A model generated the notes under the pieces. The model saw nothing but the letters and a program-made list of their open reading frames with translations, searched no databases and was not told the DNA's origin. Positions 107 to 56,968 of a stretch of DNA of 64,000 bases are shown in pieces (position 1 is the stretch's first letter; the number at the start of each line of letters is the position of its first letter). A program made the position numbers and the translations under genes. Source of the stretch: Haliotis rufescens (lineage: Eukaryota); the NCBI RefSeq assembly GCF_023055435.1, contig NW_025963891.1:7936001-8000000 (forward strand). The letters are read 5' to 3'.

Positions 107-1306
107 TTAGAGGAGTAGAATACAGAGAGTAATGCCACAACCTACGTTGAGGAACATGAATAGTCTTAGACAGAGGGCATCAAGCACATCAGAAACATCC
201 TTCCAGGCCACGCTGATAACAGGTTTCTCTTCTCTGTCGTTATCCCCATGAAGCTCCATTGTATCTGACGTATCTACCTTCATGTTTGGCTTCTGTGGAG
301 AACAGCATCTCAACAAGGTGACACATCTCTGCACAATTACAGGTACTTTACCTGTCTTCCGATGCACCCTAAGGATGATGATTGACATGGCCACAGAGAG
401 TGAGCTGAGTGTGAGAAGAATGGTGAGGTAGATGGTGAGGTAGGACGTCTGTAGGGATGTTCTTGGCATGTTGTAGGTCATCTGAGTCAGGAACACAGTG
501 AAAGAGAGTAGAACTGTCATGGAAAGCGCCACTTTGTCTCCGTATTCTAACGGCAGAGCAAAAACCAGGGAGCTGAGAAGGGATAGGAGCATGATAGGGA
601 TTATCAGGTTGAAGACATAGTATGCTGGTCGGCGCTTTAAGGTGATAGTAACGCGAAACATAGGATATCCCGCCATCAGAATTTCCTCTGAAAAATCTTT
701 TATTATCCACAATGGATTTCCATCTGTTGATCGGCTAGTGAACGACTTGTTTACTAAAGGTGTAAATCTTGCTTTATCCGGCGGTGTGTGCCAGGTGGAG
801 AGTAATATGGAACAGACCTGAGTATCAAACGGAAAATAGGAAATATCAAATTCACATCGAGTCTTGTAAAGATCTCCATGTCCCCAGCTTACTAAGCCTG
901 TGTTATGTATCAATACAAAGGCAGTTTTCTCCGCAAACATCTTTCTTTCGGTGACCGTATTGAAAATTGTTAAATCAGGAATCCACACACTATCACTAGA
1001 TATACTCAGATTTTCTTGTCCATCAAAGTCAGAAATGTTCCACTTCAGTGAATCATCAACCCATTGGAGGTAATAAAATCCATTGGTGGTCATTGACTGC
1101 TGCAACTCGTTCATTTCCGCTAAATCGAACAAATGAAATTGAATATTGATGTCCATTGCGTCTTCTGTTTCACGAGGAAACACATGTCGATTGTAATCAC
1201 TTAATACATGCTGTAACAGTCTCTTCTGTTCCTGAATCTTGTTGCAATTTATCAGTGTAAGGAAGGTAAAGAATAATTTGAGAAAGAAATGTCCACGGTA
1301 AGTCAT
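107..1306 (-). CDS. Intronless atypical nAChR-like Cys-loop channel subunit (gene 1, about 399 aa)
   Basis: Single ORF with signal peptide (MTYRGHFFLKLFFTFLTLINC), WIPD loop A, Cys-loop CEFDISYFPFDTQVC, pre-M1 LKRRP, M1-M4 and GDK at the M2 start. The ORF is open to 1468, but Met at 1306 precedes the hydrophobic signal and is conserved in the duplicate (ATG at 6795). Confidence 0.9.
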   Translation of the reverse strand: MTYRGHFFLKLFFTFLTLINCNKIQEQKRLLQHVLSDYNRHVFPRETEDAMDINIQFHLFDLAEMNELQQSMTTNGFYYLQWVDDSLKWNISDFDGQENLSISSDSVWIPDLTIFNTVTERKMFAEKTAFVLIHNTGLVSWGHGDLYKTRCEFDISYFPFDTQVCSILLSTWHTPPDKARFTPLVNKSFTSRSTDGNPLWIIKDFSEEILMAGYPMFRVTITLKRRPAYYVFNLIIPIMLLSLLSSLVFALPLEYGDKVALSMTVLLSFTVFLTQMTYNMPRTSLQTSYLTIYLTILLTLSSLSVAMSIIILRVHRKTGKVPVIVQRCVTLLRCCSPQKPNMKVDTSDTMELHGDNDREEKPVISVAWKDVSDVLDALCLRLFMFLNVGCGITLCILLL

Positions 1307-5660: not shown

Positions 5661-5737
5661 GTGAAATGATTTGAATTTGGAAAATGAAAAATGTCTTATG
5701 GATATATAATAATGTGCACGTTTAATAACTGATACTG

Positions 5738-9874: not shown

Positions 9875-11112
9875 TCACACAGGTAGCCTGCTCAATGTTG
9901 CAACGAGTGCCGCTGTGGCTGCTTCTGCTGCTGCGTGGAGCGCGTCGAAGAGTTCTGTTAGTGAGGGTGTTGCTACTGGTGCTTCTATTGCTGTGGGGGT
10001 GGTGTCTGCCACTGCTGGTGCCACTGCTGCTGCCACTGGTTTTGGTGTGGGTGCTGTTGATGAGGGTGCTGTGGTGACTGCCACTCGTTTTGGTGTGGGT
10101 GCTGCAGCATCTGAGGGGTCCATCGGTGATGGTGAAGGTGGTGGTGATGATGACTGCGCTGAAGTTACTCCTGTTACTACGGTGACGAGTGCAGCTGTTA
10201 CTGCTTCTACTGCTGTGGGTGTGGCGGCTGTGGCTGTGGCTGTTGCTGCTGCCCAGGATAGTGCTGAGGCGAATTTTTTGTTGCTGCTGCTTCTCGGGGT
10301 GTCCCCTTCAATGCCCTCACACCTGCCGCGCATTGCGCCATCTGTGGTGCATTGATGAATACTTTTAGTCAGGGTGTTGTTGCTGCGTCTGCAGCTGCAT
10401 CTTCTTCTTCCTGTGTGGTGGCTGCTTCTGCTGCTGCTACAGGTGTTGTTGATGGTGTTGTCTGCGATGAATACTGCTGCAGCAAGGGTGCATGTGAGGT
10501 TACTATTTCAACGAGTGCTACTGCTGCTGCTTCTATGGCTGCAGGTGTTGCTGCGGCTGATGCTAGTATCGCTGTCCATAGTGCTGAGTCGAGTTGTTGT
10601 GCTGTTTTCACTGCTTCTGAGGGTGTTGTTGTTAGTATGGGTGCTGCTTCTGCCGCTGCTGACGCTGCAATGAGTGCTGAGGTGAGTACGTCTGTTTCTT
10701 TTAACGTTCCCTCTGCTACCACTGTGGTAAGTGCTGTGACGTGTGGTGCTGCTGCTTTTTGGGCTGCTTTGAGTATGGATGTTGTGAGTGCTGCTGCTTC
10801 AGGTGTTGGGGTTGACTTTTCCACGTAGAGTTCCATGCTGGGGATGCAGATGCCATACTCCGGAGGCAGAAATGTGTCCACAACACTCTTTAACTTCTCA
10901 TGCATGCAGTCATGGGAAGCTTTGTACAAGGCACTTGCTCTCATCATCTCCCAATGTAGAACTAGCCGCTCCCCCAGGATGTCCGCCATTGCACGACTGA
11001 AATGCTCGCTATTGAGAACGTCCTCGTCCTTGTCCCCCTTCTCCTTCTTCTTCTGTTTGATGATGATGCGGTAGTGGCCATTGTTGTCATACGGTAGTAG
11101 TAGTCGGAACAT
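9875..11112 (-). pseudogene. Maverick accessory gene, Ala/Thr-rich protein of unknown function (disrupted)
   Basis: ORFs 10369-11112 and 9875-10333 join into about 410 aa if one TGA (10369) is read through and one base is added in the A-run near 10275. Upstream TTTAAA (about 11172) and CCAAT boxes (about 11200, 11224). Confidence 0.55.
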
Positions 11113-13792: not shown

Positions 13793-13896
13793 TTGTCTGG
13801 TCCAGACTCGATTGTTTCACAGACCGCCGTCATATAGCTGGAATATTGCTGAGTGCGGCGTTAAACAACAAATCAATCAACCAACCAACCAACCAA
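13793..13896 (+). mobile_element. SINE 3' fragment truncating pPolB
   Basis: gtctggtccagactcg...cagaccgccgtcatatagctggaatattgctgagtgcggcgttaaacaac followed by (AACC)n; same family as 15708, 20325, 23572, 36940, 50863 and 57953. Confidence 0.8.
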
Positions 13897-18068: not shown

Positions 18069-19253
18069 TCAAATGACAAGGGCAAAGAAAATAATACCAC
18101 AACCAACATTAAGCAGGAAGAAGAATCTTAGACACAGAGCATCAAGTACAAGAGATACATCTTTCCAGGTGACCACTGTATTGCACTTCTTCTGATCAAT
18201 GTCTTCAACTGGATCGTCCTGTTCATCAGATTCCATTGCATTCAAAGGCGGATTAGGAATAACATATTTCCAAAATGTGACATAATTCTGCAACACTACA
18301 GGTACATCTCCCGTTCTCTGATGGATCTTAAGAATGAAAACTGATATTGCCACAGTAAGGGAGCTGAGAGTGAGGAGCAGGGTCATGTAGATGGTGAGGT
18401 AGGACGTTTGTAGGGACGTCCTGGGCATGTTGTTGCTCATCTGCGTCAGAAACAAGCTGAATGAGAGGAGAACCGTCATGGAGAGAGACACTTTATCCCC
18501 GTATTGTATAGGCAGAGCAAAGACCACGGAGCTGAGGAGGGACAGAAACATGACGGGGATGATGAGATTGAGGACATAATATGACGCCCGACGCTGTAAG
18601 ATTGCTGTTACAACGATTTCAGGAAATTTGTTATCAGCGGTAGCGGATGACAAAGTTTTAATCTTCCACAGTCCATTCACATTAGTTGTGACGGTACTGC
18701 TGTTTTCATCAATTGAAGGTATGAAACGAGCAGATATGTTCGTGGTCGTCCACGTGGAGAGATTCAGATGGCAGGTCTGAGTATCAAATGGAAAATGTGT
18801 AATGTCAAAGTCACACTGACTTTGGTAGAGATCCCCTCGTTCCCATTCAACCGTTCCAGAATGATGTACACAAGCAGGCGCGTTCAGATTGTTCAGCAGC
18901 TTGCGCTCTTCAACTGTGTTCATGAGCGTTATGTCGGGCATCCATATATTTTCACTTGACATACAGATCATCTCTATCCCTGCATAATCCGTAATGTTCC
19001 ACCTCAATGAATCATCCCGCCACTTAAAGGAAAACCATCCATTTGTGGTCATCGATTGTTGCCTCTCATTAAGCTCAGTAATTTGCGACAAAGTAAATCT
19101 TACGTCTATATTCAACCTGGTTTCACTTGGAAAAACTTGCGGCTCATAGTCATCTTGCAAAAAATGAAGAAGTCTCTTCTGTTCTTTGATGCTGGTCCCT
19201 CCACATAAACAAATCAATGTAGTCAAGCAGATGAAATGTTTGAAGATCACCAT
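18069..19253 (-). CDS. Intronless atypical nAChR-like subunit, paralog A (394 aa)
   Basis: Complete ORF: signal peptide, WMPD, Cys-loop CDFDITHFPFDTQTC, QRR pre-M1, four TM segments, GDK, short M3-M4 loop. Confidence 0.95.
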   Translation of the reverse strand: MVIFKHFICLTTLICLCGGTSIKEQKRLLHFLQDDYEPQVFPSETRLNIDVRFTLSQITELNERQQSMTTNGWFSFKWRDDSLRWNITDYAGIEMICMSSENIWMPDITLMNTVEERKLLNNLNAPACVHHSGTVEWERGDLYQSQCDFDITHFPFDTQTCHLNLSTWTTTNISARFIPSIDENSSTVTTNVNGLWKIKTLSSATADNKFPEIVVTAILQRRASYYVLNLIIPVMFLSLLSSVVFALPIQYGDKVSLSMTVLLSFSLFLTQMSNNMPRTSLQTSYLTIYMTLLLTLSSLTVAISVFILKIHQRTGDVPVVLQNYVTFWKYVIPNPPLNAMESDEQDDPVEDIDQKKCNTVVTWKDVSLVLDALCLRFFFLLNVGCGIIFFALVI

Positions 19254-27580: not shown

Positions 27581-27741
27581 TTACAATCATTGTGTTCGTA
27601 TTTAAATTAGATAAACAATTAAGCATTTACAGATCAAGTTGGGAAGGTGTGGCATCGAGGTCTTCGCCAATAGAGGGTTATGTATCCATGAATTGGTTCA
27701 TTTTGGATTTCATGCAATAATAGTAAAAGATTTTTACCTTT

Positions 27742-28926
27742 TCAAATGACAAGGGCAAAGAAAATAATACCACAACCAACATTAAGCAGAAAGAATAATT
27801 TAAGACACAGAGCATCAACTGCAAGTGATACATCTTTCCAGGTGACCACTGTATTGCACTTCTTCTGATCAATGTCTTCAACTGGATCGTCCTGTTCATC
27901 AGATTCCATTGCATTCATAGGCGGATTAGGAATAACATATTTCCAAAATGTGACATAATTCTGCAACACTACAGGTACATCTCCCGTTCTCTGATGGATC
28001 TTAAGAATGAAAACTGATATTGCCACAGTAAGGGAGCTGAGAGTGAGGAGCAGGGTCATGTAGATGGTGAGGTAGGACGTCTGTAGGGATGTCCTGGGCA
28101 TGTTGTTGCTCATCTGCGTCAGAAACACGCAGAATGAGAGGAGAACCGTCATGGAGAGAGACACTTTATCCCCGTATTGTATAGGCAGAGCAAAGACCAC
28201 GGAGCTAAGGAGGGACAGAAACATGACAGGGACGATGAGATTGAGGACATAATATGACGCCCGACGCTGTAAGATTGCTGTTACAACGATTTCAGGAAAT
28301 TTGTTATCAGCTTTAGCGGATGACAAAGTTTTAATCTTCCACAGTCCATTCACATTAGTTGTAACGGTACTGCTGTTTTCATCAATTGAAGGTATGAAAC
28401 GAGCAGATGCGTTCGTGGTCGTCCATGTGGCGAGATTCAGATGACATGTCTGGGTATCAAATGGAAAATGTGTAATGTCAAAGTCACACTGACTGTGATA
28501 GAGGTCGCCATGGATCCATTCTACCATTCCAGAATGATGTACACTAGCAGGCGCGTTCAGATTGTTCAGCAGCTTGCGCTCTTCAACTGTGTTCATGAGC
28601 GTTATGTCGGGCATCCATATATTTTCACTTGACATACAGATCATCTCTATCCCTGCATAATCCGAAATGTTCCACCTCAATGAATCATCCCGCCACTTAA
28701 AGGAAAACCATCCATTTGTGATCATCGATTGTTGCCTCTCATTAAGCTCAGTAATTTGCGACAAAGTAAATCTTACGTCTATATTCAACCTGGTTTCACT
28801 TGGAAAAACTTGCGGCTCATAGTCATCTTGCAAAAAATGAAGAAGTCTCTTCTGTTCTTTGATGCTGGTCCCTCCACATAAACAAATCAATGTAGTCAAG
28901 CAGATGAAATGTTTGAAGATCACCAT
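27742..28926 (-). CDS. Intronless atypical nAChR-like subunit, paralog B (394 aa)
   Basis: Complete ORF colinear with A; distinct loop E (ASVHHSGMVEWIHGDLYH) and M2 (SFCVF). Confidence 0.95.
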   Translation of the reverse strand: MVIFKHFICLTTLICLCGGTSIKEQKRLLHFLQDDYEPQVFPSETRLNIDVRFTLSQITELNERQQSMITNGWFSFKWRDDSLRWNISDYAGIEMICMSSENIWMPDITLMNTVEERKLLNNLNAPASVHHSGMVEWIHGDLYHSQCDFDITHFPFDTQTCHLNLATWTTTNASARFIPSIDENSSTVTTNVNGLWKIKTLSSAKADNKFPEIVVTAILQRRASYYVLNLIVPVMFLSLLSSVVFALPIQYGDKVSLSMTVLLSFCVFLTQMSNNMPRTSLQTSYLTIYMTLLLTLSSLTVAISVFILKIHQRTGDVPVVLQNYVTFWKYVIPNPPMNAMESDEQDDPVEDIDQKKCNTVVTWKDVSLAVDALCLKLFFLLNVGCGIIFFALVI

Positions 28927-29991
28927 TGCTACCTATTTATATATGCATCTGTACTGAATACCAGACCGAGAGATGTTCGATAGGAGAAATGCTTAACACT
29001 ACTGAATAGTATTTCAGTTATATCAAATCGTGTCAGCTTAATGTTGAAGGAACACCCTGAATTGAGATGAATTTCCAAGATGCAAATACTCGATAAAATC
29101 CCGGAAATAGACACACACATAGTATTTATCTTCTAATTACAATAAAACTAAAACTTACATACCACTGGACACTTAATCACTACTTACATATTTCACTGGT
29201 ATGTATATTTGTAATATTGACCTTATCGGACATGTGTAATGCAGTTCAAATATAATCAGTCCCCCGCCGTGATATTGCTGGAATATTGCTAAAAGCGGCA
29301 TAAAACCATACTCACTCACTCACTCACTCAAATATAATCAACAAAACTCTTCCATTATTCATAAGAAATCTCTGCAAAAGGCAGAGTCGATTGTAAGATT
29401 ACGACTATGTCATGAGCATGTGTTTATTAATCCCTAATTGTGATGATACCAGGCGTTCGCGAAAAGGTGAGCGTATCCTTCCTCACTGGTAGTGGCACCA
29501 TCACAAACACATGCAAAGGCAGGTCAATTGCTCGCATGAAAAAACACGGGAACATGTGGCACAATTGTGGACATTATTCTTGTCACTCATGCGTCATATT
29601 TTGAAATGTGCTCTACGTGTCTACCATAAAACTGTTTGAAAGCTTTCTTAGGCCTTGAATGTTCTTACGTTGATCAAACAGCTTTGAAATGAAATGTCTT
29701 CTTAAAACAGAGTCCACTGTATTATTCCGACTATATCATGAGCAGGTATTGACGAATCACTATCAAATAGCGATAATGCCAGGTGTTTCCGAGAAAGTGA
29801 GTGTACCCTGAAACATACCTTAGGCTTGCTTCGTCCAGGTTTAAGTATTTTCACCGTATGCAATGGCTGTGTATGGAATTGAACGCTTTGATAATGACTG
29901 GTATAAACGAGATACAAATGAAATGTTACTAAGAGAACCATAGTACCTTAGAATACAGAAGATTGCTTTTGATCATTAATCATTCTGGGAA

Positions 29992-30920: not shown

Positions 30921-33900
30921 CCTCGTGTGGAACCGAGGTAGAATTTGTCCACAGCACCCCATTGCTGGTCGTAAAAGGCGACCAAATTGGGCAACCCGTT
31001 TGCCGTGGGTTGCGCCCCTGTGTCGGTGGAGGACGGGATTCTGGTGGTTGATGGCACTGGAGCCAGGAACAGGTGTTCCTTTTGCCAAACTTACCACTTT
31101 GACCCTTACTTCACCTAGACGGGTGGTTGAATTGGCCCGAATCAAAGGAAATAAATTGTTAATCATAAGATATGATTATGTTATTAATGCCAATTTATAT
31201 TTTGCCTAGAGTCTTATGCCAGAAGGCGGTGGTACCATGGGCCAATCTGGTGATACGGACCGCTGAATTCTGTGTTTTTATAGGAAAATGCCATGGGCCG
31301 AACCAGCCTGACATTTGTCCTTTTATTAACAACAGCTTTTCATGTCTTTATTTCTGGAGTATAACACCCCTGTAACCCTGGTGTTCCAGACTGGTTTCCA
31401 CTGTGGCACTGTCCTTGTTGACACTCGATGGCGAGTGCGGAGCAGGGGTGCTGAAATATGTTCTTACAACATGGCTTTCAATCCTCATTCTGGTTCATCT
31501 AAAACAAACAAACGCAGGCATATAGATTCTCTTTCATCTGATGAAGATGTCCCTTCACTTCACAGGTAACTGACTCATGGCCAAGGTTCATTGTCATCTC
31601 ATCAGTTGATAGCAATCAACCCAAAAAAACTCAATCCTTTTGCAATCTCAAAAGGAATACAAAGTATTTGTGGGGAAGTAAAGAACGTCATACGTTTACG
31701 ATCTGGCTCAATCCTTGTGGAATGTGATCGGAGGCAGCAATCTGTTAATCTGCTGGGTCTCCAGCAGTTTGTTAACACAAAGGATGTAGTTTCTGAACAC
31801 AAATCCCTGAATTCAAGCAGAGGCATTGTGAGAGATCGTGCTCGCTGTCTCGCAGACATGACAGAGGAAGACATTGTAGCTGAATTGAAACACCAAGGTG
31901 TCACTACAGTCAAACGTTTTCCTAGAAAAACTGAAGATGGAAATATTGTAAATACTTAGACCTACCTTTTCACGTTTTCAATTTCAACTCTCCCCAAATC
32001 AATCAAAGCTGGTTACTTTTCCATCGGAATGGAGGTTTATGTTCCAAATCCACTCCGGTGTTACAAGTGTCAGAAATTCGGTCACGGGGCTAAATTTTGC
32101 ACTGCCAAGACAAGATGCTTCCGTTGCAGCAGATCTCATGAAAGTTCAGATTGCACAAATGACATCAAATATGCCAACTGTGACGGAAAGCACTTGTCTT
32201 CATCCAAATCCTGTCCGGTTTTTGAACGCGAAAGTAAAATACTAAAACTTAAATGTACAAACAGTATTTCTTACACAGAAGCAAAAAAGTTACTTTTTCC
32301 ATCCCTCATTCCAAACAATAAAACCTATTCAGCTGCTGTATCTTCCACAAAACCAGCTCCCACAATGTCAACGGCATCTACTCAAACAGACATCTCTTGG
32401 GTACAGGCTGACCTCATAAACCTTGGTGACCAATTGACAACTGCTTCTACAACACAGTCTAAGCCTTCAGAACCAGACAAGATACATGAAATTGAAAATG
32501 TTCAGGGTAAAGCCAATTTGTCCAAATAAAACAAACAAAAAATGATTTACAGTTATTAATACAAGATTTTATACCATCAGTATTTTGTTTACAGGAAACT
32601 TATTTTAAAGATACCGACCAACTCCAGATAAGATAATATAATTCATATAACTATTTCTCTCCTCCAGGACCTAAAGTCACTGGAGGATCTTCAGTATTGG
32701 TGAGGTAGGGTGTTATACATAGCCCCGTTCCTCTAAATACACCCCTTCAAGCTGTTGCTGTCCGGTTAACTGTAAACATTGTATTTACATTATGCTCACT
32801 TTATGTTCCTCCATCTTCTCATCTTCAACAAACTGACCTTCAAGCACTATATGACCAGCTCCCCAAGCCCTGTATCATTATGGGCGACTTAAATGGACAT
32901 AATCCAATTTGGGGAAGTGCTTATTCCAACCGGAAAGGGAAGATACTAGAAGATTTTCATTTGATAACGCTAAAACCTATTTACATCCTGGTACAGGCAC
33001 CTATCCCCCACTTGACTTATCACTTACAACCTCAGATTTACTAAATGAATTCGAATGGTCAGTCCACGACGACCTCTGTGGAAGAGACCATTTTCCAACT
33101 ATTCTTCAAACAATAGCTCCTACTGATAATCCTCCATCATCAAGATGGAATTTCACAAAAGCTAACTGGTAATTGTTCGAGTTACTCTGTACGAGCAAAT
33201 TAAATCCTGATCGTTTTGTTGATGTTCCTGATTCAATGAATGTGTTCTCTGATGAACAAAACAAAAAAGCTGATGAATGTATGCCCAAGTCCTCTGGAAA
33301 TCCACACATTCGTAAACCATGGTTTTATGATACGTGCAAGCAAGCTAGAAAGGCACGGAAGAAATCTGAACATTATTCCCGTCGCCATCCTATGGTGCAT
33401 AATTTAAATAAATTCAAAATTCTAAATGCTAAAGCACGGCGTACATTTAAGCAAAATAAACGTATGTCTTGGCAAGCTTACGTTTCAAAAATAAATTCAC
33501 GAACGCCGATGTCCAAGGTATGGAACATGATCCAGAAAATCAAAGGTAAGGGATATAAATCTGGCATTCACAATCTAAGGAATGGGAAATGAGTTGTTAA
33601 CTGATAAATCTGATATTGCAAATAAACTGGGTGAAACTTTGGCCAAACACTCTTCCTCTTCCAATTATGTGCCTCAATTTAAGAAATACCAAAAGCAGCA
33701 GGAAAAGAAAACTATTCATTTTAATTCAGATAATGGGGAAGATTACAATGAACAAAATACTGCCTTCGGACAATCTCACGATACTGCTACTGGAGCTGAT
33801 AACATACATTATCAACTCCTGAAGCACTTACCAGAATCATGTTTACAATCACTGTTAAATATTTTGGATGAAATTTGGACGTCAGGACGATTTCCACCGT

Positions 33901-36658
33901 CTTTGCGTGATGCAATTGTTGTTCCAATACCTAAACCAGGACGTGATCACACAGATCCATCAAATTATCGACCAATTTCATTGACAAGCTGCGTTTGCAA
34001 AACCATGGAACGCATGATAAATAATCGACTTGTTTGGTACTTAGAAACCAATAATCTCATTACAAATATACAATGTGGTTTCCGTAAGAACAGAAGTACT
34101 ATCGATCATTTAGTACGTTTAGAATCATTTGTTAAAAATGCCATAATAAACAAACAATATGCAGTGTCTATCTTTTTCGATCTCGAAAAAGCATATGACA
34201 CTACATGGAAACATGGTACTTTAAAAGATTTACATAACTTTGGATTGCGACTTTTTAACAGACACACAATTTCAAGTCCGCGTGGGCACTACCCTGTCTG
34301 ATCATTATAATCAGGATCAGGGCGTCCCACAGGGCAGTATTTTGTCTGTCACATTATTCAGCATAAAGATCAATAGTTTGACGAAAGTTTTAAATGATTC
34401 AAGTGATGGATCACTTTTTGTGGATGATTTTAATATTTCCTGTCGTGGCAAACACATGCATAAAATCGAAAGGCAACTGCAGCTATGTTTAAATAAAATC
34501 CAGAAATGGTCCCTGGAAAATGGATATAAATTCTTAAAATCTAAAACAAACTGCTTTCATTTTTGTAGAAAATATAAACTGCACAAAGATCCGGAACTTA
34601 TTTTAGATAACACTCCTATTACAGTTGTAAAAGAAGCCAAGTTCCTGGGTATAATTTTCGATCACCATTTGACTTTTCTGCCTCACATTAAATATTTGAA
34701 GAATAAATATCTGAATGCCCTGGATTTACTGAAAGTTGTCTCAAATTCTAAGTGGGGAGGAGATAAGAAAACCCTCCTTCAACTATACAGAGCACTTTTC
34801 CGCTCCAAATAAGATTATGACTCCATCATTTTTGGTGGAGCTTGTAAAACCAATTTAAAATATTCTAGATCCTTTTAACCATCAAGGCCTAAGGTTTTGC
34901 CTTGGAACCTTCCGAACTTCTCCAATACAAAGTTTGTATGTGGAGGCTGATGAGCCGTCCCTTAAACAACGTCGCATTACATTGTCTTGGCAATATGTAT
35001 CTAAATTACGTTCTTTGAAATCAAACCCAGCTTATGATTGTGTTTTTAATCCTCTATACACAAATCTCTACCGAACAAAGTCATCTCTTCGTCCACCGCT
35101 TGGAATAAGAATAGCATCTCATATTTCTGCTGCGCAAATGAAGCTTGAAAACATTGCCCCAAATCAGCTTTTCTCTTCTCCACCATGGCAGTTTGTGAAG
35201 CCAGAGGTGAACCTAACATTAACCAAATTAAAAAAATCTGACACAAATCAATATATTTATCAACAACAATATCATGAATTACGCAACACATATGATACTT
35301 ACGAATCTATATATACAGGTGGATCCAAAGATGGTGACGCTGTTGCCAGCGCCACTGTCGTTGGATCCAGGACTATCCCATCCCACTTACCACTTTACTG
35401 TTCTATTTTTACAGCAGAAGCAAATGCTATTTTTAACAGCACTTAAAGACATCAACAGCCAATCTAAACATAAACAGTTCATAATTTGTTCAGATTCTCT
35501 TTCTTGCCTCCAGGCTATTAAAACATATCATCCACGAATCCACTTATAATTGAAATTATTGAATTGTTTAATGATCTTGCTACTGGCCAATACGACATCG
35601 TTTTCTGTTGGATACCCAGCCATGTTGGAATCACTGGGAACACAATGGCCGATGCTGCTGCAATAGCAGCACTCAACAAATCTGTGACGCCACTTCGTAT
35701 CCCATACACCGATATCAAACCTCTTATCAGATGTTACATCCGAGATCGGATGCAAAAGAAGTGGGACACCCAAGTATATATCAATAAATTACATGAAATT
35801 CAACCAACTATCGGTTACACCTACTTGGGTTGTCAGTCCAGATTTGAAGAGGTCGTAATGCGAAGATGTCATATTGGCAATAGCAGATATACACATGAAC
35901 ATTTATTGAAAGGTGAGGATCCTCCATTTTGTATCCCTTGTGATGAGAGACTGTATTGATTTTGCCATCACAAGGGATAAATATTTATCTTCATCTGTCA
36001 AGGATCTTTTTAATAATATTAATTCTCTTTTAATCATTGGTTTTTTAAAAGAAATAGAATTGTTTGAACGTTTTTGATTGATCTGTTTTTTAAATTGGTA
36101 GATTAAATAAGCAACTGAGATTGTCAGTGGCTGTATCCTCGAAGGGTGTTAAAGCACTGTAATATAATTGTCCCCCAGAGAGGATACGTAAGTTCCACAT
36201 CACTCGAAATAAATTTAAGCCTACCACGATTTTAATCGTAGTATTTTTGTCAGTTTTAATTAATGGCTAAACTTGCATACAGTCGCCAGCGCCTGAAGGG
36301 ATGGTGTAAATCCTGCTGGAGTCCATGTAGGTAGCAAAGGTACTATAAGTCCCCATGGTTCCTAGTATGGGATCTCCCTTCAATTCCTGGCGATCTATAG
36401 CCCGTTCTTACAATGTATTGTTATGTTTAGTAACAGCTTTTTATGGTCACATAATAGTTTTGAAAATTGATATCTGTGATAAGTCTAGTAATTTTACTGT
36501 CCTTTGCTGACAGGTTTTTATATAGTCTAAATTAATGTTTTCTTAATGTATTAATTGCTTTAGTCACGATGTGGCTGAAATATTGCCGATGTGACTTTAA
36601 ATATTAACTCACTCACTCACTCACTCACTCACTCACTCACTCACTCACTCACTCACTC
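30863..36658 (+). mobile_element. Near full-length I-group (Nimb/I-like) non-LTR retrotransposon, inactivated (copy 1)
   Basis: ORF1 from about 31471 with CCHC knuckles (RCYKCQKFGH). ORF2 fragments: APE (MGDLNGHN, DHFP), RT (YRPISLTSC, FFDLEKAYD, GVPQGS, FVDD), RNase H (SDSLS, WIPSHVGITGN). (ACTC)13 tail 36607-36658; many stops and frameshifts. Confidence 0.92.
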
Positions 36659-41422: not shown

Positions 41423-42607
41423 TCAAATGACAAGGGCAAAGAAAATAATACCACAACCAACATTAAGCAGAAAGAATAATTTAAGACACAGAGCATCAAC
41501 TGCAAGTGATACATCTTTCCAGGTGACCACTGTATTGCACTTCTTCTGATCAATGTCTTCAACTGGATCGTCCTGTTCATCAGATTCCATTGCATTCATA
41601 GGCGGATTAGGAATAACATATTTCCAAAATGTGACATAATTCTGCAACACTACAGGTACATCTCCCGTTCTCTGATGGATCCTAAGAATGAAAACTGATA
41701 TTGTCACAGCAAGGGAGCTTAGAGTGAGGAGCAGGGTCATGTAGATGGTGAGGTAGGACGTCTGTAGGGACGTCCTGGGCATGTTGTTGCTCATCTGCGT
41801 CAGAAACAAGCTGAATGAGAGGAGAACCGTCATGGAGAGAGACACTTTATCCCCGTATTGTATAGGCAGAGCAAAGACCACGGAGCTGAGGAGGGACAGA
41901 AACATGACGGGGATGATGAGATTGAGGACATAATATGACGCCCGACGCTGTAAGATTGCTGTTACAACGATTTCAGGAAATTTGATATCAGCGGTAGCGG
42001 ATGACAAAGTTTTAATCTTCCACAGTCCATTCACATTAGTTGTGACGGTACTGCTGTCTTCATTAATTGAAGGTATGAAACGAGCAGATGCGTTCGTGGT
42101 CGTCCATGTGGAGAGATTCAGATGACAGGTCTGGGTATCAAATGGAAAATGTGTAATGTCAAACTCACACTGACTTTGGTAGAGATCCCCGTGTTCCCAT
42201 ACAACCGTTCCAGAATGATGTACACAAGCAGGCGCATTCAGATTGTTCAGCAGCTTGCGCTCTTCAACTGTGTTCATGAGCGTTATGTCGGGCATCCATA
42301 TATTTTCACTTGACATACAGATCATCTCTATCCCTGCATAATCCGAAATGTTCCACCTCAATGAATCATCCCGCCACTTAAAGAAAAACCATCCATTTGT
42401 GGTCATAGATTGTTGCCTCTCATTAAGCTCCGTAATTTGCGACAAAGTAAATCTTACATCTATATCCAACCTGGTTTCACTTGGAAAAACTTGCGGCTCA
42501 TAGTCATCTTGCAAAAAATGAAGAAGTCTCTTCTGTTCTTTGATGCTGGTCCCTCGACATAAACAAATCAATGTAGTCAAGCAGATGAAATGTTTGAAGA
42601 TCACCAT
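41423..42607 (-). CDS. Intronless atypical nAChR-like subunit, paralog C (394 aa)
   Basis: Complete ORF colinear with A; distinct loop D (WFFFKW), loop E (TVVWEH), loop F (SINEDSS) and loop C (ADIKF). Confidence 0.95.
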   Translation of the reverse strand: MVIFKHFICLTTLICLCRGTSIKEQKRLLHFLQDDYEPQVFPSETRLDIDVRFTLSQITELNERQQSMTTNGWFFFKWRDDSLRWNISDYAGIEMICMSSENIWMPDITLMNTVEERKLLNNLNAPACVHHSGTVVWEHGDLYQSQCEFDITHFPFDTQTCHLNLSTWTTTNASARFIPSINEDSSTVTTNVNGLWKIKTLSSATADIKFPEIVVTAILQRRASYYVLNLIIPVMFLSLLSSVVFALPIQYGDKVSLSMTVLLSFSLFLTQMSNNMPRTSLQTSYLTIYMTLLLTLSSLAVTISVFILRIHQRTGDVPVVLQNYVTFWKYVIPNPPMNAMESDEQDDPVEDIDQKKCNTVVTWKDVSLAVDALCLKLFFLLNVGCGIIFFALVI

Positions 42608-44798: not shown

Positions 44799-47700
44799 CC
44801 TCGTGTGGAACCGGGGTAGAATTTGTCCACAGCACCCCGTTGCTGGTCGTAAAAGGCGACCAAATTGGGCAACCCGTTTGCCGTGGGTTGCGCCCCTGTG
44901 TCGGTGGAGGACGGGATTCTGGTGGTTGATGGCACTGGAGCCAGGAACAGGTGTTCCTTTTGCCAAACTTACCACTTTGACCCTTACTACACCTAGACGG
45001 GTGGTTGAATTGGCCCGAATCAAAGGAAATAAATTGTTTATCATAAGATATGATTATGTTATTAATGCCAATTTATATTTTGCCTAGAGTCTTATGCCAG
45101 AAGGCGGTGGCTCATGGGCCAATCTGGTGATACGGACCGCTGAATTCTGTGTTTTTATAGGAAAATGCCATGGGCCGAATCAGCCTGACATTTGTCCTTT
45201 TATTAACAACAGCTTTTCATGTCTTTATTTCTGGAGTATAAAACCCCTGTAACCCTGGTGTTCCAGACTGGTTTCCACTGTGGCACTGCCCTTGTTGACA
45301 CTCGATGGCGGGTGCGGAGCAGGGGTGCTGAAATATTTTCTTACAACATGGCTTTCAATCCTCATTCTGGTTCATCTAAAACAAACAAACGCAGGCATAT
45401 AGATTCTCTTTCATCTGATGAAGATGTCCCTTTACTTCACAGGTAACTGACTCATGGCCAAGGTTCATTGTCAAAAAAACTCAATCCTTTTGCAATCTCA
45501 AAGGGAATACAAAGTATTTGTGGGGAAGTAAAGAACGTCATACGTTTACGATCTGGCTCAATCCTTGTGGAATGTGATCGGAGGCAGCAATCTGTTAATC
45601 TGCTGGGTCTCCAGCAGTTTGTTAACACAAAGGATGTGGTTTCTGAACACAAATCCCTGAATTCAAGCAGAGACATTGTGAGAGATCGTGCTCGCTGTTC
45701 ACGTTTTCACTTTCAACTCTCCCCAAATCAATCAAAGCTGGTTACTTTTCCATCGGAGTGGAGGTTTATGTTCCAAATCCACTCTGGTGTTACAAGTGTC
45801 AGAAATTCGGTCACGGGGCTAAATTTTGCACTGCCAAGACAAGATGCTTCCGTTGCAGCAGATCTCATGAAAGCTCAGATTGCACAAATGACATCAAATG
45901 TGCCAACTGTGACGGAAAGCACTTGTCTTCATCCAAATCCTGTCCGGTTTTTGAACGCGAAACTAAAATACTAAAACTTAAATGTACAAATAGTTACTTT
46001 TTCCATCCCTCATTCCAAACAATAAAACCTATTCAGCTACTGTATCTTCCACCAAACCAGCTCCCACAATGTCAACGGCATCTACTCAAACAGACATCTC
46101 TTGGGTACAGGCTGACCTCATAAACCTTGGTGACCAATTGACAACTGCTTCTACAACACAGTCTAAGCCTTCAGAACCAGACAAGATACATGAAATTGAA
46201 AATGTTCAGGGTAAAGCCAATTTGTCCAAAAAACAAACAAAAAAGCAAATGAGAAGGGCCAGGGCACTTCAGCACTTGGAGGTGCCTTCTCCTACAAATA
46301 CCCCTGTAGAGGTTCATAACCCTTTTGAACCTTTGGCGATGGATGCTGTTCTCTAAGCCCCAGTCCATGGGAAAGGGTTTATCTCGCTCACGATCTCCAG
46401 TTGAGCCACCATGAACGGCTCTAATAAAATTATTTAGTGGAATTGCAGAGGGCTAAAGAATAATTTTAATGATTTACAGTTATTAATACTAGATTTTAAA
46501 CCATCAGCATTTTGTTTACAGGAAACTTTTTTTAAAGATACCGACCAACTCCAGATAAGATGACATAATTCATATAACAATTTCTCTTTTCCAGGACCTA
46601 AAGTCACTGGAGGATCTTCCGTATTGGTAAGGCAGGGTGTTATACATAGCCCTGTTCCTCTAAATACACCCCTTCAAGCTGTTGCTGTTCGGTTTACTGT
46701 AAACATTGTATTTACATTATGCTCACTTTATGTTCCTCCATCTTCTCATCTTCAACAAACTGATCTTCAAGCACTATATGACCAGCTCCCCAAGCCCTGT
46801 ATCATTATGGGCGACTTAAATGGACATAATCCACTTTGGGGAAGTGCTGATTCCAAACGGAAAGGGAAGATACTAGAAGATTTCATTTGATAACGCTTTA
46901 TGCATTTTTGATGATAACTCTAAAACCTATTTACATCCTGGTACAGGCACCTATCCCCCACTTGACTTATCACTTACAACCTCAGATTTACTTAATGAAT
47001 TCGAATGGTCAGTCCACGACGACCTCTGTGGAAGTGACCATTTTCCAACTATTCTTCAAACAATAGCCCCTACTGATAATCCTCCATCATCTAGATGGAA
47101 TTTCACAAAAGCTAACTGGTAATTGTTCGAGTTACTCTGTAAGAGCAAATTAAATCCTGATCGTTTTGTTGATGTTCCTGATTCATAAAAGTGTTCTCTG
47201 ATGAACTAAACAAAAAAGGTGATGAATGTATCCCCAAGTCCTCTGCAAATCCACACATTCGTAAACCATGGTTTATGATACGTGCAAGCAAGCTAGAAAG
47301 GCACGGAAGAAATCCGAACATTATTCCCGTCGCCATCCTATGGTGCATAATTTAAATAAATTCAAAATTCTAAATGCTAAAAAGCGGCGTACATTTAAGC
47401 AAAATAAACGTATGTCTTGGCAAGCTTACGTTTAAAAAATAAATTCACGAACGCCGATGGCCAAGGTATGGAACATGATCCAGAAAATCAAAGGTAAGGG
47501 ATATAAATCTGGCATTCACAATCTTAAGAATGGAAATGAGTTGTTAACTGATAAATCTGATATTGCAAATAAACTGGGTGAAACTTTGGCCAAACATTCT
47601 TCCTGTTCCAATTATGTGCCTCAATTTAAGAAATACCAAAAGCAGCAGGAAAAGAAAACTATTCATTTTAATTCAGATAATGGGGAAGATTACAATGAAA

Positions 47701-50579
47701 TATTTTCTATTCATGAACTACATACTGCCCTCGGACAATCTCACGATACTGCTACTGGAGCTGATAACATACATTATCAACTCCTGAAGCACTTACCAGA
47801 ATCATGTTTACAATCACTGTTAAATATTTTGGATGAAATTTGGACGTCAGGACGATTTCCACCGTCTTTGCGTGATGCAATTGTTGTTCCAATACCTAAA
47901 CCAGGACGTGATCACACAGATCCATCAAATTATCGACCAATTTCATTGACAAGCTGCGTTTGCAAAACCATTGAACGCATGATAAATAATCGACTTGTTT
48001 GGTACTTAGAAACCAATAATCTCATTACAAATATACAATGTGGTTTCCGTACAGAAGTACTATCGATCATTTAGTACGTTTAGAATCATTTTTTAAAAAT
48101 GCCATAATAAACAAACAATATGCAGTGTCTATCTTTTTCGATCTCGAAAAAGCATATGACACTACATGGAAACATGGTATTTTAAAAGATTTACATAACT
48201 TTGGATTGCGACTTTTTAACAGACAGACAATTTCAAGTCCGCGTGGGCACTACCCTGTCTGATCATTATAATCAGGATCAGGGCGTCCCACAGGGCAGTA
48301 TTTTGTCTGTCACATTATTCAGCATAAAGATCAATAGTTTAACGAAAGTTTTAAATGATTCAATTGATGGATCACTTTTTGTGGATGATTTTAATATTTC
48401 CTGTCGTGGCAAAAACATGCATACAATCGAAAGGCAACTGCAGCTATGTTTAAATAAAATCCAGAAATGGTTCTTGGCAAATGGATTTAAATTCTCAAAA
48501 TCTAAAACAAACTGCATTCATTTTTGTAGAAAATAAAAACTGCACAAAGATCCGGAACTTATTTTAGATAACACTCCTATTACAGTTGTAAAAGAAGCCA
48601 AGTTCCTGGGTATAATTTTCTATCACCATTTGACTTTTCTGCCTCACATTAGATATTTCAAGAATAAATATCTGAATGCCCTGGATTTACTGAACGTTGT
48701 CTCAAATTCTAAGTGGGGAGGAGATAAGAAAACCCTCCTTCAACTATACAGAGCACTTATCCGCTCCAAATTAGAATATGATTCCATCATTTTTGGTGGA
48801 GCTTGTAAAAGCAGTTTAAAAATTCTAGATCCTATTCACCATCAAGGCCTGAGGCTTTGCCTTGGAACCTTCAGAACTACTCCAATACAAAGTCTGTATT
48901 TTGAGGGCTGATGAGCCGTCCCTTAAACAACGTCGCATTAAATTGTCTTTGCAATATGTATCTAAATTACGTCCTTTGAAATCAAGCCCAGCTTATGATT
49001 GTGTTTTTAATCCTCTATACAAAAATCTCTACCGAACAAAGTCATCTCTTCTTCCACCGCTTGGAATAAGAATAGCATCTCATATTTCTGCTGCGCAAAT
49101 AAAGCTTGAAAACATTGCCCCAAATCAGCTTTTCTCTTCTCCACCATGGCAGTTTGTGAAGCCAGAGGTGTACCTAACATTAACCAAATTAACGAAATCT
49201 GACACAAATCGATATATTTATCAACAACAATATCATGAATTACGCAACACATATGATACTTATTAATCTATATATACAGATGGATCCAAAGATGGTGACG
49301 CTGTTGCCAGCGCAAATGTCGTTGGATCCAGGACTATCCCATCCCACTTACCACTTTACTGTTCTATTTTTACAGCAGAAGCAAATGCTATTTTTAACAG
49401 CACTTAAATACATCAACAGCCAATCTAAACATAAACAGTTCATAATTTGTTCAGATTCTCTTTCTTGCCTCCAGGCTATTAAAACATATCATCCACGAAT
49501 CCACTTATAATTGAAATTATTGAATTGTTTAATGATCTTGCTACTGGCCAATACGACATCGTTTTCTGTTGGATACCCAGCCATGTTGGAATCACTGGGA
49601 ACACAATGGCCGATGCTGCTGCAATAGCAGCACTCAACAAATCCGTGACGCCACTTCGTATCCCGTACACCGATATCAAACCTCTTATCAGATGTTACAT
49701 CCGAGATCGGATGCAAAAGAAGTGGGACACCCAAGTAGGTATCAATAAATTACATGAAATTCAACCAACTATCGGTTACACCTACTTGGGTTGTCAGTCC
49801 AGATTTGAAGAGGTCGTAATGCGAAGATGTCGTATTGGCAATAGCAGATATACACATGAACATTTATTGAAAGGTGAGGATCCTCCATTTTGTATCCCTT
49901 GTGATGAGAGACTGTATTGATTTTGCCATCACAAGGGATAAATATTTATCTTCATCTGTCAAGGATCTTTTTAATAATATTAATTCTCTTTTAATCATTG
50001 GTTTTTTAAAAGAAATAGAATTGTTTGAACGTTTTTGATTAATCTGTTTTTTTAAATTGGTTGATTAAATAAGCAACTGAGATTGTCAGTGGCTGTATCC
50101 TCGAAGGGTGTTAAAGCACTGTAATATTATTGTCCCCCAGAGAGGATACGTAAGTTCCACATCACTCGAAATAAATTTAAGCCTACCACGATTTTGATCG
50201 TAGTATTTTTGTCAGTTTTGATTAATGGCTAAACTTGCATACAGTCGCCAGCGCCTGAAGGGATGGTGTAAATCCTGCTGGAGTCCATGTAGGTAGCAAA
50301 GGTACTATAAGTCCCCATGGTTCCTAGTATGGGGATCTCCCTTCAATTCCTGGCGATCTATAGGCCGTTTTTACAATGTATTGTTATGTTTAGTAACAGC
50401 TTTTTATGGTCACATAATAGTTTTGAAAATTGATATCTGTGATAAGTCTAGTAATTTTACTGTCCTTTGCTGACAGGTTTTTATATAGTCTAAATTAATG
50501 TTTTCTTAATGTATTAATTGCTTTAGTCACGATGTGGCTGAAATATTGCCGAAATATTCACTCACTCACTCACTCACTC
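44741..50579 (+). mobile_element. I-group LINE, inactivated (copy 2, duplicated with its flanks)
   Basis: Colinear with 30863-36658 and has the same flanks. Keeps the ORF1 end and ORF2 start (MNGSNKII*WNCRGL at about 46411) deleted in copy 1; (ACTC)5 tail. Confidence 0.92.
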
Positions 50580-55783: not shown

Positions 55784-56968
55784 TCAAATGACAAGGGCAA
55801 AGAAAATAATACCACAACCAACATTAAGCAGAAAGAATAATTTAAGACACAGAGCATCAACTGCAAGTGATACATCTTTCCAGGTGACCACTGTATTGCA
55901 CTTCTTCTGATCAATGTCTTCAACTGGATCGTCCTGTTCATCAGATTCCATTGCATTCATAGGCGGATTAGGAATAACATATTTCCAAAATGTGACATAA
56001 TTCTGCAACACTACAGGTACATCTCCCGTTCTCTGATGGATCTTAAGAATGAAAACTGATATTGCCACAGTAAGGGAGCTGAGAGTGAGGAGCAGGGTCA
56101 TGTAGATGGTGAGGTAGGACGTCTGTAGGGATGTCCTGGGCATGTTGTTGCTCATCTGCGTCAGAAACAAGCTGAATGAGAGGAGAACCGTCATGGAGAG
56201 AGACACTTTATCCCCGTATTGTATAGGCAGAGCAAAGACCACGGAGCTGAGGAGGGACAGAACCATGACAGGGATGATGAGATTGAGGACATAATATGAC
56301 GCCCGACGCTGTAAGATTGCTGTTACAACGATTTCAGGAAATTTGTTATCAGCGGTAGCGGATGACAAAGTTTTAATCTTCCACAGTCCATTCACATTAG
56401 TTGTGACGGTACTGCTGTTTTCATCAATTGAAGGTATGAAACGAGCAGATGTGTTCGTGGTCGTCCACGTGGAGAGATTCAGATGGCAGGTCTGAGTATC
56501 AAATGGAAAATGTGTAATGTCAAAGTCACACTGACTTTGGTAGAGATCCCCTTGTTCCCATTCAACCGTTCCAGAATGATGTACACAAGCAGGCGCATTC
56601 AGATTGTTCAGCAGCTTGCGCTCTTCAACTGTGTTCATGAGCGTTATGTCGGGCATCCATATATTTTCACTTGACATACAGATCATCTCTATCCCTGCAT
56701 AATCCGAAATGTTCCACCTCAATGAATCATCCCGCCACTTAAAGGAAAACCATCCATTTGTGGTCATCGATTGTCGCCTCTCATTAAGCTCCGTAATTTG
56801 CGACAAAGTAAATCTTACGTCTATATCCAACCTGGTTTCACTTGGAAAAACTTGCGGCTCATAGTCATCTTGCAAAAAATGAAGAAGTCTCTTCTGTTCT
56901 TTGATGCTGGTCCCTCCACATAAACAGATCAATGTAGTCAAGCAGATGAAATGTTTGAAGATCACCAT
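55784..56968 (-). CDS. Intronless atypical nAChR-like subunit, paralog D (394 aa)
   Basis: Complete ORF colinear with A; loop E TVEWEQ, loop B TNTSA. Confidence 0.95.
   Translation of the reverse strand: MVIFKHFICLTTLICLCGGTSIKEQKRLLHFLQDDYEPQVFPSETRLDIDVRFTLSQITELNERRQSMTTNGWFSFKWRDDSLRWNISDYAGIEMICMSSENIWMPDITLMNTVEERKLLNNLNAPACVHHSGTVEWEQGDLYQSQCDFDITHFPFDTQTCHLNLSTWTTTNTSARFIPSIDENSSTVTTNVNGLWKIKTLSSATADNKFPEIVVTAILQRRASYYVLNLIIPVMVLSLLSSVVFALPIQYGDKVSLSMTVLLSFSLFLTQMSNNMPRTSLQTSYLTIYMTLLLTLSSLTVAISVFILKIHQRTGDVPVVLQNYVTFWKYVIPNPPMNAMESDEQDDPVEDIDQKKCNTVVTWKDVSLAVDALCLKLFFLLNVGCGIIFFALVI

What the first reader, a model, noticed from the sequence alone, without database searches (positions are those of the whole stretch)
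41980..42390. Substitutions among the four near-identical paralogs hit ligand-contact positions
In alpha7 numbering (A/B/C/D): loop D 57 S/S/F/S; loop E 109 C/S/C/C, 115 T/M/T/T, 117 E/E/V/E, 119 E/I/E/E, 120 R/H/H/Q (four different codons CGA/CAT/CAC/CAA); after loop B N-[I/A/A/T]-S with the sequon kept; loop F DENSS vs NEDSS in C (sequon lost); loop C T>K in B and N>I in C. Positions 57, 109, 117 and 119 are classic complementary-face contacts, and several changes swap charge for hydrophobicity. This suggests diversifying selection on specificity and combinatorial heteropentamers.
Basis: partly seen in the sequence, partly recalled or inferred. Interest (0 to 1): 0.78.

Follow-up and report, generated by a model that had tools for sequence, protein, structure and literature searches.

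The report
Abalone nicotinic-like receptor copies: pocket variation
Four nearly identical abalone genes for orphan nicotinic-receptor-like channel subunits do differ mostly around the predicted ligand pocket, but the differences fit relaxed constraint plus patchwise DNA exchange between copies rather than proven positive selection.

Summary
The window carries four intact, intronless 394-aa Cys-loop subunit genes on the minus strand (A 18069-19253, B 27742-28926, C 41423-42607, D 55784-56968).

Amino-acid differences are denser in the six binding loops: 11 of 73 loop codons against 20 of 321 others, p=0.027. With two further close homologues it is 17 of 73 against 26 of 321, p=0.0006.

Diversifying selection is not shown.
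- Gene-wide dN/dS is 0.33-0.45.
- The N:S contrast between loops and the rest is not significant (p=0.15-0.38).
- The enrichment disappears without codons 128-144.
- In that block copy B carries 10 of its 20 private changes within 51 nt. Synonymous divergence there is about 0.5, against 0.06 gene-wide, so the patch has a separate, older history.
- Its informative sites fall in three conflicting blocks, which marks a gene-conversion mosaic.

The B patch is real. It is present in contigs of two studies of the same species and of another organism.

Across 29 young paralog pairs genome-wide, loops evolve faster (omega 0.59 against 0.37) but stay below 1. This is a new member of the published mollusc nAChR expansion. 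The scan had already found such arrays elsewhere in this genome.

The parts
18069..19253 (-). Copy A: intact intronless 394-aa Cys-loop subunit gene
   Evidence: ORF list; alignment; 97% identical to D
27742..28926 (-). Copy B: intact 394-aa gene, the most divergent copy (20 private nucleotide changes)
41423..42607 (-). Copy C: intact 394-aa gene. The finding's coordinates 41980-42390 are its codons 73-210 (loops D to C)
   Evidence: Pfam PF02931 + PF02932
55784..56968 (-). Copy D: intact 394-aa gene, with the fewest private changes (3)
   Evidence: AlphaFold2 model pLDDT 81.7; Foldseek top hits nAChR subunits
28495..28545 (-). Hyperdivergent 51-nt patch in copy B (codons 128-144, loop E hairpin): 10 private B changes plus the multi-state site of codon 139
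   Evidence: permutation p<5e-5; no better donor in the assembly; B-type contigs in runs X1, X5 and X16
18117..18153 (-). Second divergent patch, in copy A (codons 367-379, start of M4): 7 of A's 12 private changes, 3 silent and 4 replacing
   Evidence: p=5e-5; A's downstream flank does not align to the other units
42191..42226 (-). Loop E of copy C (codons 128-139) with E136V
42383..42385 (-). Codon 75 of copy C (TTC, Phe; alpha7 position 57, loop D)
107..1270 (-). Fifth, distant paralog (52% identical), member of the neighbouring subfamily L005-L007
5625..6740 (-). Broken copy of the distant paralog (five stops inside the match)
   Evidence: self-BLAST; L012

Best explanation
The region is a young, concertedly evolving tandem array of four intronless genes in an abalone (Haliotis). 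They encode non-alpha, nicotinic-receptor-like Cys-loop subunits whose acetylcholine aromatic box is incomplete, so the ligand is unknown.

The differences between copies have three sources:
1. Scattered point substitutions under moderately relaxed purifying selection. The pocket loops are the least constrained part of the extracellular domain.
2. Block-wise exchange between copies by gene conversion or unequal crossing-over.
3. Two short patches with roughly tenfold higher silent divergence: loop E in B and M4 in A. These carry an older or foreign history.

The apparent targeting of ligand-contact positions is mainly the loop-E patch plus weak constraint on the loops.

Shown: the gene family, the intact reading frames, omega below 1, the mosaic, the patches, and the presence of the B patch in other samples.

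Inferred: that the proteins form ligand-gated cation channels; that the patches arose by conversion from a lost donor or by escape from homogenisation; and that the pocket differences change ligand preference.
For: Family: PF02931 and PF02932; best solved relatives are nAChR subunits at E about 1e-47; Foldseek TM about 0.8.

Genome context: at least 105 scored matches out of 740 candidates, in tandem clusters. The nearest named proteins are Haliotis proteins.

Selection on the four copies:
- omega 0.33-0.45 gene-wide.
- 22 silent of 53 variable codons against 0.22 expected, p=0.001. Without the two patches it is 15 silent of 36, p=0.006.
- Silent divergence of 0.035-0.071 gene-wide matches non-coding divergence between units of 0.015-0.079.

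Mosaic: the nine informative sites sort into AB|CD (nt 142-372), AD|BC (474-517) and AC|BD (699-837). The chance of such perfect sorting is 0.0048.

Patches:
- B has 10 of 20 private changes in 51 nt, p<5e-5. A has 7 of 12 in nt 1101-1137, p=5e-5.
- Loop-E dS for B against the other copies is 0.48-0.62.
- The B-type patch contig has 0 differences in X1, 1 in X5, and 1 in X16 from another organism.

Family-wide, 29 independent young pairs from 88 ORFs: omega is 0.59 in loops, 0.37 in the rest of the extracellular domain, 0.22 in M1-M3 and 0.70 in the intracellular loop plus M4.

Similar patches with raised pS and raised pN occur at loop E in three other pairs and elsewhere.
Against: - Amino-acid variation is enriched in the loops: p=0.027 with four copies and p=0.0006 with six close sequences.
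- Five of the six sites with three or more states among close sequences are in or next to pocket loops: 128, 136, 139, 173 and 208.
- The most divergent 51-nt window falls in loop E in 4 of the 15 pairs with clustering at p<0.05, where about 0.8 is expected (post hoc p=0.007). Islands of old divergence at a binding loop are what selection against homogenisation would leave.
- No donor for the B patch exists in the assembly.
- With four sequences the power to detect omega above 1 at single sites is very low.
Confidence: 0.6

Rival explanations
1. True diversifying selection. The copies are being driven apart at pocket residues to recognise different ligands, as reported for octopus chemotactile receptors. 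Divergent loop-E and loop-C segments are kept by selection against homogenising gene conversion, so homo- and heteropentamers offer a combinatorial set of pockets.
For: - Loop enrichment of replaced codons.
- Repeated replacement at 128, 136, 139, 173 and 208 among sequences more than 93% identical.
- Charge-to-hydrophobic swaps E136V, E138I and N208I, and S75F.
- The B patch is kept in another organism with one difference, and it shares M134, H139 and H144 with H. rubra P0003.
- Loop-E and loop-C patches recur in other arrays.
- One loop-C patch (L005/L006) has Nd 8 against Sd 1.
Against: - No partition reaches omega above 1: loops 0.59, 15 core positions 0.58, loop E 0.45 family-wide.
- No single site exceeds the neutral expectation after correction. 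The best is p=0.015 among 374 sites.
- N:S tests are not significant.
- An equally strong patch lies in M4, and the signal peptide and intracellular loop show patches too.
- There is no expression or ligand data.
Confidence: 0.28
2. Neutral decay. The copies are redundant retrogene-like duplicates drifting towards pseudogenes, and the loop changes are simply unconstrained.
For: - Loop N:S of 11:4 is indistinguishable from the neutral 3.5:1.
- A broken relative lies in the same window (L012).
- No RNA holder was found.
- Jiao et al. report more unexpressed genes among intron-poor nAChR genes (PMC6896357 passage).
Against: - All four 394-codon frames are intact despite 3-5% divergence.
- omega is significantly below 1 (p=0.001).
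- M1-M3 is strongly conserved: family-wide omega 0.22.
- A 95-97% identical homologue is annotated in H. cracherodii.
Confidence: 0.07
3. Assembly artefact. The copy differences, especially the B patch, come from mis-joined haplotypes or collapsed repeats.
For: Near-identical tandem repeats are error-prone. Single B-private letters outside the patch were not seen in the contigs laid, although those contigs drop minority paths.
Against: A contig identical to B over 28465-28575 is present in X1, and one with a single difference is in X5, a different study. X16, another organism, also holds it with one difference. The units differ in their flanks and transposon insertions.
Confidence: 0.03

Closest known systems
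Lophotrochozoan (mollusc) expansion of intronless, tandemly arrayed nAChR genes (Jiao et al. 2019, PMC6896357; passages read)
   Same: Intronless genes in tandem arrays, lineage-specific young duplicates, high sequence diversity. This genome has at least 105 scored matches in clusters.
   Different: That paper centres on bivalves. The word search found no mention of Haliotis and none of positive selection. The mosaic structure and the divergent patches are not described in the passages I read.
Cephalopod chemotactile receptors (CRs) and the 'CR-like' clade of other molluscs (PMC11526382 and PMC13174522; passages read)
   Same: nAChR-derived, intronless, acetylcholine site altered, variable pocket residues, and homo- or heteropentamers proposed to widen the ligand range.
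   Different: Clade membership was not tested, because no CR sequence was at hand. Solved CR chains were not among the listed hits (the 60 rows and the rows printed). Diversifying selection, sensory expression and hydrophobic ligands are reported for octopus CRs, but none is shown here.
Vertebrate non-alpha nAChR subunits (Torpedo beta and gamma, human beta2)
   Same: Best sequence and fold matches. The Cys-loop, four membrane helices, loop B Trp and loop D Trp are kept, and there is no vicinal Cys pair in loop C.
   Different: About 26% identity. Loop C is 7 residues shorter than in Torpedo gamma. The loop A Tyr position is Met and the first loop C Tyr position is Ser. The intracellular loop is very short.
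Concerted evolution of tandem duplicates with islands of divergence (population-genetic theory of gene conversion between duplicates; recalled, no paper read)
   Same: Low background divergence, conflicting site blocks, and short tracts with much higher silent divergence.
   Different: No donor copy was found, and selection on the island is not demonstrated.

Membership tests
Cys-loop pentameric ligand-gated ion channel, nAChR branch | Neur_chan_LBD plus Neur_chan_memb domains | tested here: met
   PF02931 E=9.6e-41 and PF02932 E=8.6e-14 for copy C
Cys-loop pentameric ligand-gated ion channel, nAChR branch | Cys-loop: two cysteines 13 residues apart, with an FPFD core | tested here: met
   C147 and C161 with FPFD at 154-157 are invariant in all copies
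Cys-loop pentameric ligand-gated ion channel, nAChR branch | Beta-sandwich extracellular domain followed by four membrane helices, with a fold like solved nAChRs | tested here: met
   AlphaFold2 model, mean pLDDT 81.7, helices 224-246, 253-275, 285-312 and 363-393. Foldseek E about 1e-31 and TM 0.72-0.80 to muscle, alpha7 and alpha4beta2 receptors
Acetylcholine-binding (alpha-type) nAChR subunit | Vicinal Cys pair in loop C and a complete aromatic box (loop A Tyr, loop B Trp, two loop C Tyr, loop D Trp) | tested here: not met
   Alignment to alpha4 and Torpedo gamma: T205-A206 stand where alpha4 has the Cys pair, S203 where it has the first loop C Tyr, and M111 at the loop A Tyr position. W168, W73 and F210 are kept. 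Which residues define the box is recalled and partly backed by PMC3066128
Cephalopod chemotactile receptor (CR) / CR-like clade | Placement inside the CR or CR-like clade in a phylogeny | not tested
   No CR sequence was available from any call
Cephalopod chemotactile receptor (CR) / CR-like clade | Pocket sites under diversifying selection (omega above 1) | tested here: not met
   Loops omega 0.59, 15 core positions 0.58. No site is significant after correction. Power is low for the four copies alone
Cephalopod chemotactile receptor (CR) / CR-like clade | Expression in sensory epithelium and gating by contact chemicals | not testable with these tools
   No RNA holder on record. One 217-nt contig of a run only guessed to be RNA
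Gene-conversion mosaic among tandem paralogs | Conflicting phylogenetic partitions arranged in contiguous blocks | tested here: met
   AB|CD, AD|BC and AC|BD blocks, sorting p=0.0048
Gene-conversion mosaic among tandem paralogs | Tracts with raised silent as well as replacement divergence | tested here: met
   B loop E pS 0.47-0.55 against 0.04 in the rest; A M4 pS 0.22 against 0.024
Gene-conversion mosaic among tandem paralogs | An identifiable donor copy | tested here: not met
   A genome-wide DNA search with 106 nt around the patch found only the four copies, at 100, 89, 89 and 87%

The most novel reading that the evidence does not exclude
In abalone orphan nicotinic-like receptor arrays, gene conversion keeps tandem copies nearly identical. 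Selection meanwhile preserves old, divergent cassettes at the pocket-forming loop E and loop C hairpins. The B-type loop E is one such cassette: it is shared across species and resembles one of two H. rubra paralogs. The arrays would then behave like a chemoreceptor family whose specificity is stored in short protected islands.
Probability: 0.22. Interest if true: 0.55.

Novelty: new member of a known kind. Interest (0 to 1): 0.3.

Why it matters
If the pocket differences were selected, abalone (a gastropod) would have an ionotropic chemoreceptor-like family parallel to the octopus chemotactile receptors. The four copies would then be a natural mutagenesis series for finding the ligand.

As it stands, the value is mostly cautionary. 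In young tandem arrays, clusters of amino-acid changes at functional sites can be single conversion tracts. Silent-site and recombination checks are needed before calling diversifying selection.

The recurrence of divergent loop-E and loop-C patches across independent arrays is the one lead worth a proper multi-species test.

Tried and rejected
- Donor search for the B patch in the whole assembly: only the four copies were found.
- Nucleotide comparison of the patch with seven more distant paralogs: B shares GTA135 and CAT139 with some of them, but its other changes are unique. None of them is the donor.
- Site-wise counting on a tree: iqtree2 would not give ancestral sequences.
- Mapping variable sites on a pentamer: structure prediction returns no coordinates. 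I used alignments to solved receptors and the literature instead.
- Expression: no RNA run holds the gene. The one contig from a run guessed to be RNA covers only 27665-27880 and cannot be assigned to a copy.
- Local mutational hot spot at loop E: rejected, because family-wide loop-E pS (0.084) equals the rest of the extracellular domain (0.087).
- Caveat on the loop boundaries and the 15 core positions: they were set from recalled alpha7 numbering before the tests. Mapping of loops C and F onto distant paralogs is uncertain because of indels.
- Caveat on the 29 pairs: they were picked greedily by lowest dS, and several come from the same clusters.
- Supplementary files of the papers were not seen. 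Those of PMC13174522 may hold clade assignments for Haliotis sequences.

Full report
WHAT IS THERE

The window is G000:C113:7936001-8000000 of a 1.33-Gb genome. Its nearest named proteins are all from Haliotis, so it is an abalone.

Four intact intronless ORFs of 394 codons lie on the minus strand: A 18069-19253, B 27742-28926, C 41423-42607 and D 55784-56968. They are 94.7-97.2% identical in protein. They sit 9.7-14.4 kb apart, and reverse-transcriptase ORFs lie between B and C and between C and D.

Each has the Neur_chan_LBD and Neur_chan_memb domains, a Cys-loop (C147-C161) and four predicted membrane helices. Their closest solved relatives are nicotinic receptor subunits.

Alignment to human alpha4 and Torpedo gamma shows the following.
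- There is no vicinal cysteine pair in loop C.
- Loop C is 7 residues shorter than in Torpedo gamma.
- Met stands at the loop A tyrosine position.
- The loop B and loop D tryptophans (W168, W73) are kept.

The copies are therefore non-alpha, probably acetylcholine-insensitive orphan subunits.

The genome holds at least 105 scored matches of this kind in tandem clusters. This is the expansion described for molluscs by Jiao et al. 2019 (PMC6896357, passages). Earlier notes of this scan describe several such arrays elsewhere in this genome.

THE OBSERVATION

The alpha7 numbering checks out against the Torpedo gamma residue alignment and the alpha7 chain ranges. The chain-index offsets used for that check are recalled.

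Positions 55, 57, 109, 117 and 119 are named as complementary-face residues of alpha7 in passages of PMC3066128 and PMC10133702.

In all, 53 codons vary: 31 with replacements and 22 silent. Twelve of the 31 replaced codons are outside the extracellular domain.

IS IT MORE THAN CHANCE?

I fixed the loop boundaries from recalled alpha7 numbering: D 71-77, A 104-112, E 123-139, B 164-172, F 179-194 and C 199-213, 73 codons in total.

- Replaced codons number 11 of 73 in loops against 20 of 321 elsewhere (p=0.027).
- They number 5 of 15 at a recalled list of core pocket positions against 26 of 379 elsewhere (p=0.004).
- Silent codons are not enriched in loops.
- Adding the H. cracherodii homologue P0013 (300 aa) and a 394-aa Logan protein P0015 gives 17 of 73 against 26 of 321 (p=0.0006). 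The sites with three or more states are then 128, 136, 139, 173, 208 and 377.

So amino-acid variation really does concentrate near the predicted pocket.

IS IT POSITIVE SELECTION?

Nei-Gojobori estimates:

| Region | omega |
|---|---|
| Whole gene | 0.33-0.45 |
| Extracellular domain | 0.27-0.65 |
| Membrane part | 0.30-0.49 (one pair at 1.24, on 1 silent and 4 replacing changes) |

The excess of silent changes over neutral expectation is significant: 22 of 53 against 0.22 expected, p=0.001.

Silent divergence (0.035-0.071) equals non-coding divergence between the units (0.015-0.079).

The N:S ratio in loops (11:4) does not differ significantly from the rest of the extracellular domain (7:9, p=0.15) or from all other codons (20:18, p=0.22). 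Without codons 128-144 all enrichment tests lose significance.

TRACTS AND MOSAIC

Copy B has 20 private nucleotide changes. Ten of them, plus the multi-state third base of codon 139, lie within nt 382-432 (permutation p<5e-5). They include four silent changes and a GAA-to-ATC codon.

Silent divergence of B from the other copies in codons 125-144 is 0.48-0.62, against 0.056-0.071 for the whole gene. A run of independent selected point mutations would not raise silent divergence, so this stretch has a separate history.

Copy A has a second such patch at the start of M4: 7 of its 12 private changes lie in nt 1101-1137 (p=5e-5). Right after its stop codon, homology to the other units ends.

The nine parsimony-informative sites fall into three mutually incompatible partitions in perfectly contiguous blocks (p=0.0048). 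The copies have therefore exchanged segments.

No donor for the B patch exists in the assembly.

The patch is not an assembly error. A contig identical to B over 28465-28575 is in run X1, one with a single difference is in X5 (another study), and one with a single difference is in X16 (another organism). In X16 the differing letter turns codon 128 back to Cys.

B also shares M134, H139 and H144 with H. rubra P0003, whereas D shares E138-Q139 with H. rubra P0002. Over the 17 residues B matches P0003 at 14 of 17, and matches every other sequence compared at 11-13 of 17. The B-type loop E therefore looks old.

FAMILY-WIDE TEST

I used 88 ORFs from 90 fetched loci. Of the 105 matches, 15 were not fetched. 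From the 88 ORFs I took 29 non-overlapping closest pairs with dS below 0.30.

| Partition | Pooled omega |
|---|---|
| Binding loops | 0.59 |
| Rest of extracellular domain | 0.37 |
| M1-M3 | 0.22 |
| Intracellular loop plus M4 | 0.70 |
| 15 core positions | 0.58 |
| Loop C | 0.86 |
| Loop B | 1.03 |
| Loop E | 0.45 |

The loop excess over the scaffold is significant (N:S 250:118 against 295:201, p=0.013), but omega stays below 1.

Codon 75 ranks 4th of 374, and pooled pN/pS at the 11 sites is 0.60. No site beats the neutral expectation after correction for 374 tests.

A scan for 51-nt clusters found significant ones (p<0.01) in 7 of 29 pairs. The most divergent window lay in loop E in 4 pairs and in loop C in 6. 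In these patches silent divergence is raised along with replacement divergence. The exception is the L005/L006 loop C patch, with Nd 8 and Sd 1.

READING

The best-supported account is a concertedly evolving array under relaxed purifying selection, with weakly constrained pocket loops and with tract-wise exchange.

Old divergent segments at loop E and loop C, persisting in otherwise homogenised copies and across species, are what selection for different pockets would leave behind. Chance conversion from a lost copy explains them as well. The M4, signal-peptide and intracellular-loop patches show that such tracts are not confined to the pocket.

Heteromer formation, expression and ligands remain untested.

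COMPARISON WITH WHAT IS KNOWN

The gene kind and its expansion are published (PMC6896357). Pocket diversification of nAChR-derived receptors is published for cephalopod chemotactile receptors (PMC11526382, passages). A CR-like clade that includes gastropods has been proposed (PMC13174522, passages).

In three full-text searches I found no paper on these abalone genes or on conversion tracts in such arrays. None of the three searches used the word Haliotis or abalone, so they do not establish absence.

Noticed in passing
window 28977-29100: Contig depth jumps to about 10^4 in all four runs just upstream of copy B's start codon, close to where B's homology with the other units ends (29058). This suggests a very high-copy repeat inserted about 50-170 nt upstream of the ATG.
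   Followed up: no
window 11511-13833 (minus strand), with alanine-rich ORFs at 9651-11112: Split ORFs match DNA_pol_B_2 (PF03175, E=3e-14 and 3e-5) inside a GC-rich island (0.47-0.52 against about 0.38). This is probably a decayed Polinton/Maverick-like or virus-derived element.
   Followed up: partly
window 2380-3111 (minus strand): A 243-aa ORF with Tc3-type HTH and DDE_3 transposase domains (Tc1/mariner-like).
   Followed up: partly
window 32029-35446 and 45468-48074 (plus strand): Two copies, about 96% identical, of a non-LTR retrotransposon with an RVT_1 ORF lie in the B-C and C-D spacers. The element was therefore part of the duplicated unit.
   Followed up: partly
window 107-1270 and 5625-6740; loci L005, L006: A second subfamily (52-54% identical to A-D) has one intact copy and one broken copy (5 stops) in the window, and two more copies upstream. 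The L005/L006 pair has a loop C patch with 8 replacing changes against 1 silent change.
   Followed up: partly
L079 and L084 (G000:C246), codons 197-213 in D numbering: 26 nucleotide differences within 51 nt of loop C between two otherwise close paralogs (dS 0.157). This is the strongest patch in the family scan.
   Followed up: partly
window copies A-D; proteins P0001, P0011, P0012, P0014: The public protein models for these four genes are 300 aa long. Judging from the same-length H. cracherodii model P0013, which aligns from codon 95, they start at the internal Met95. That would omit the signal peptide and loop D, although the full 394-codon frame is open.
   Followed up: no
window copy B, codons 266-267 (about 28126-28131): B alone has Cys-Val instead of Ser-Leu at two consecutive M2 positions. 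By my recalled numbering these are 12' and 13', near pore-lining positions. Val is also the residue in both H. rubra proteins.
   Followed up: no
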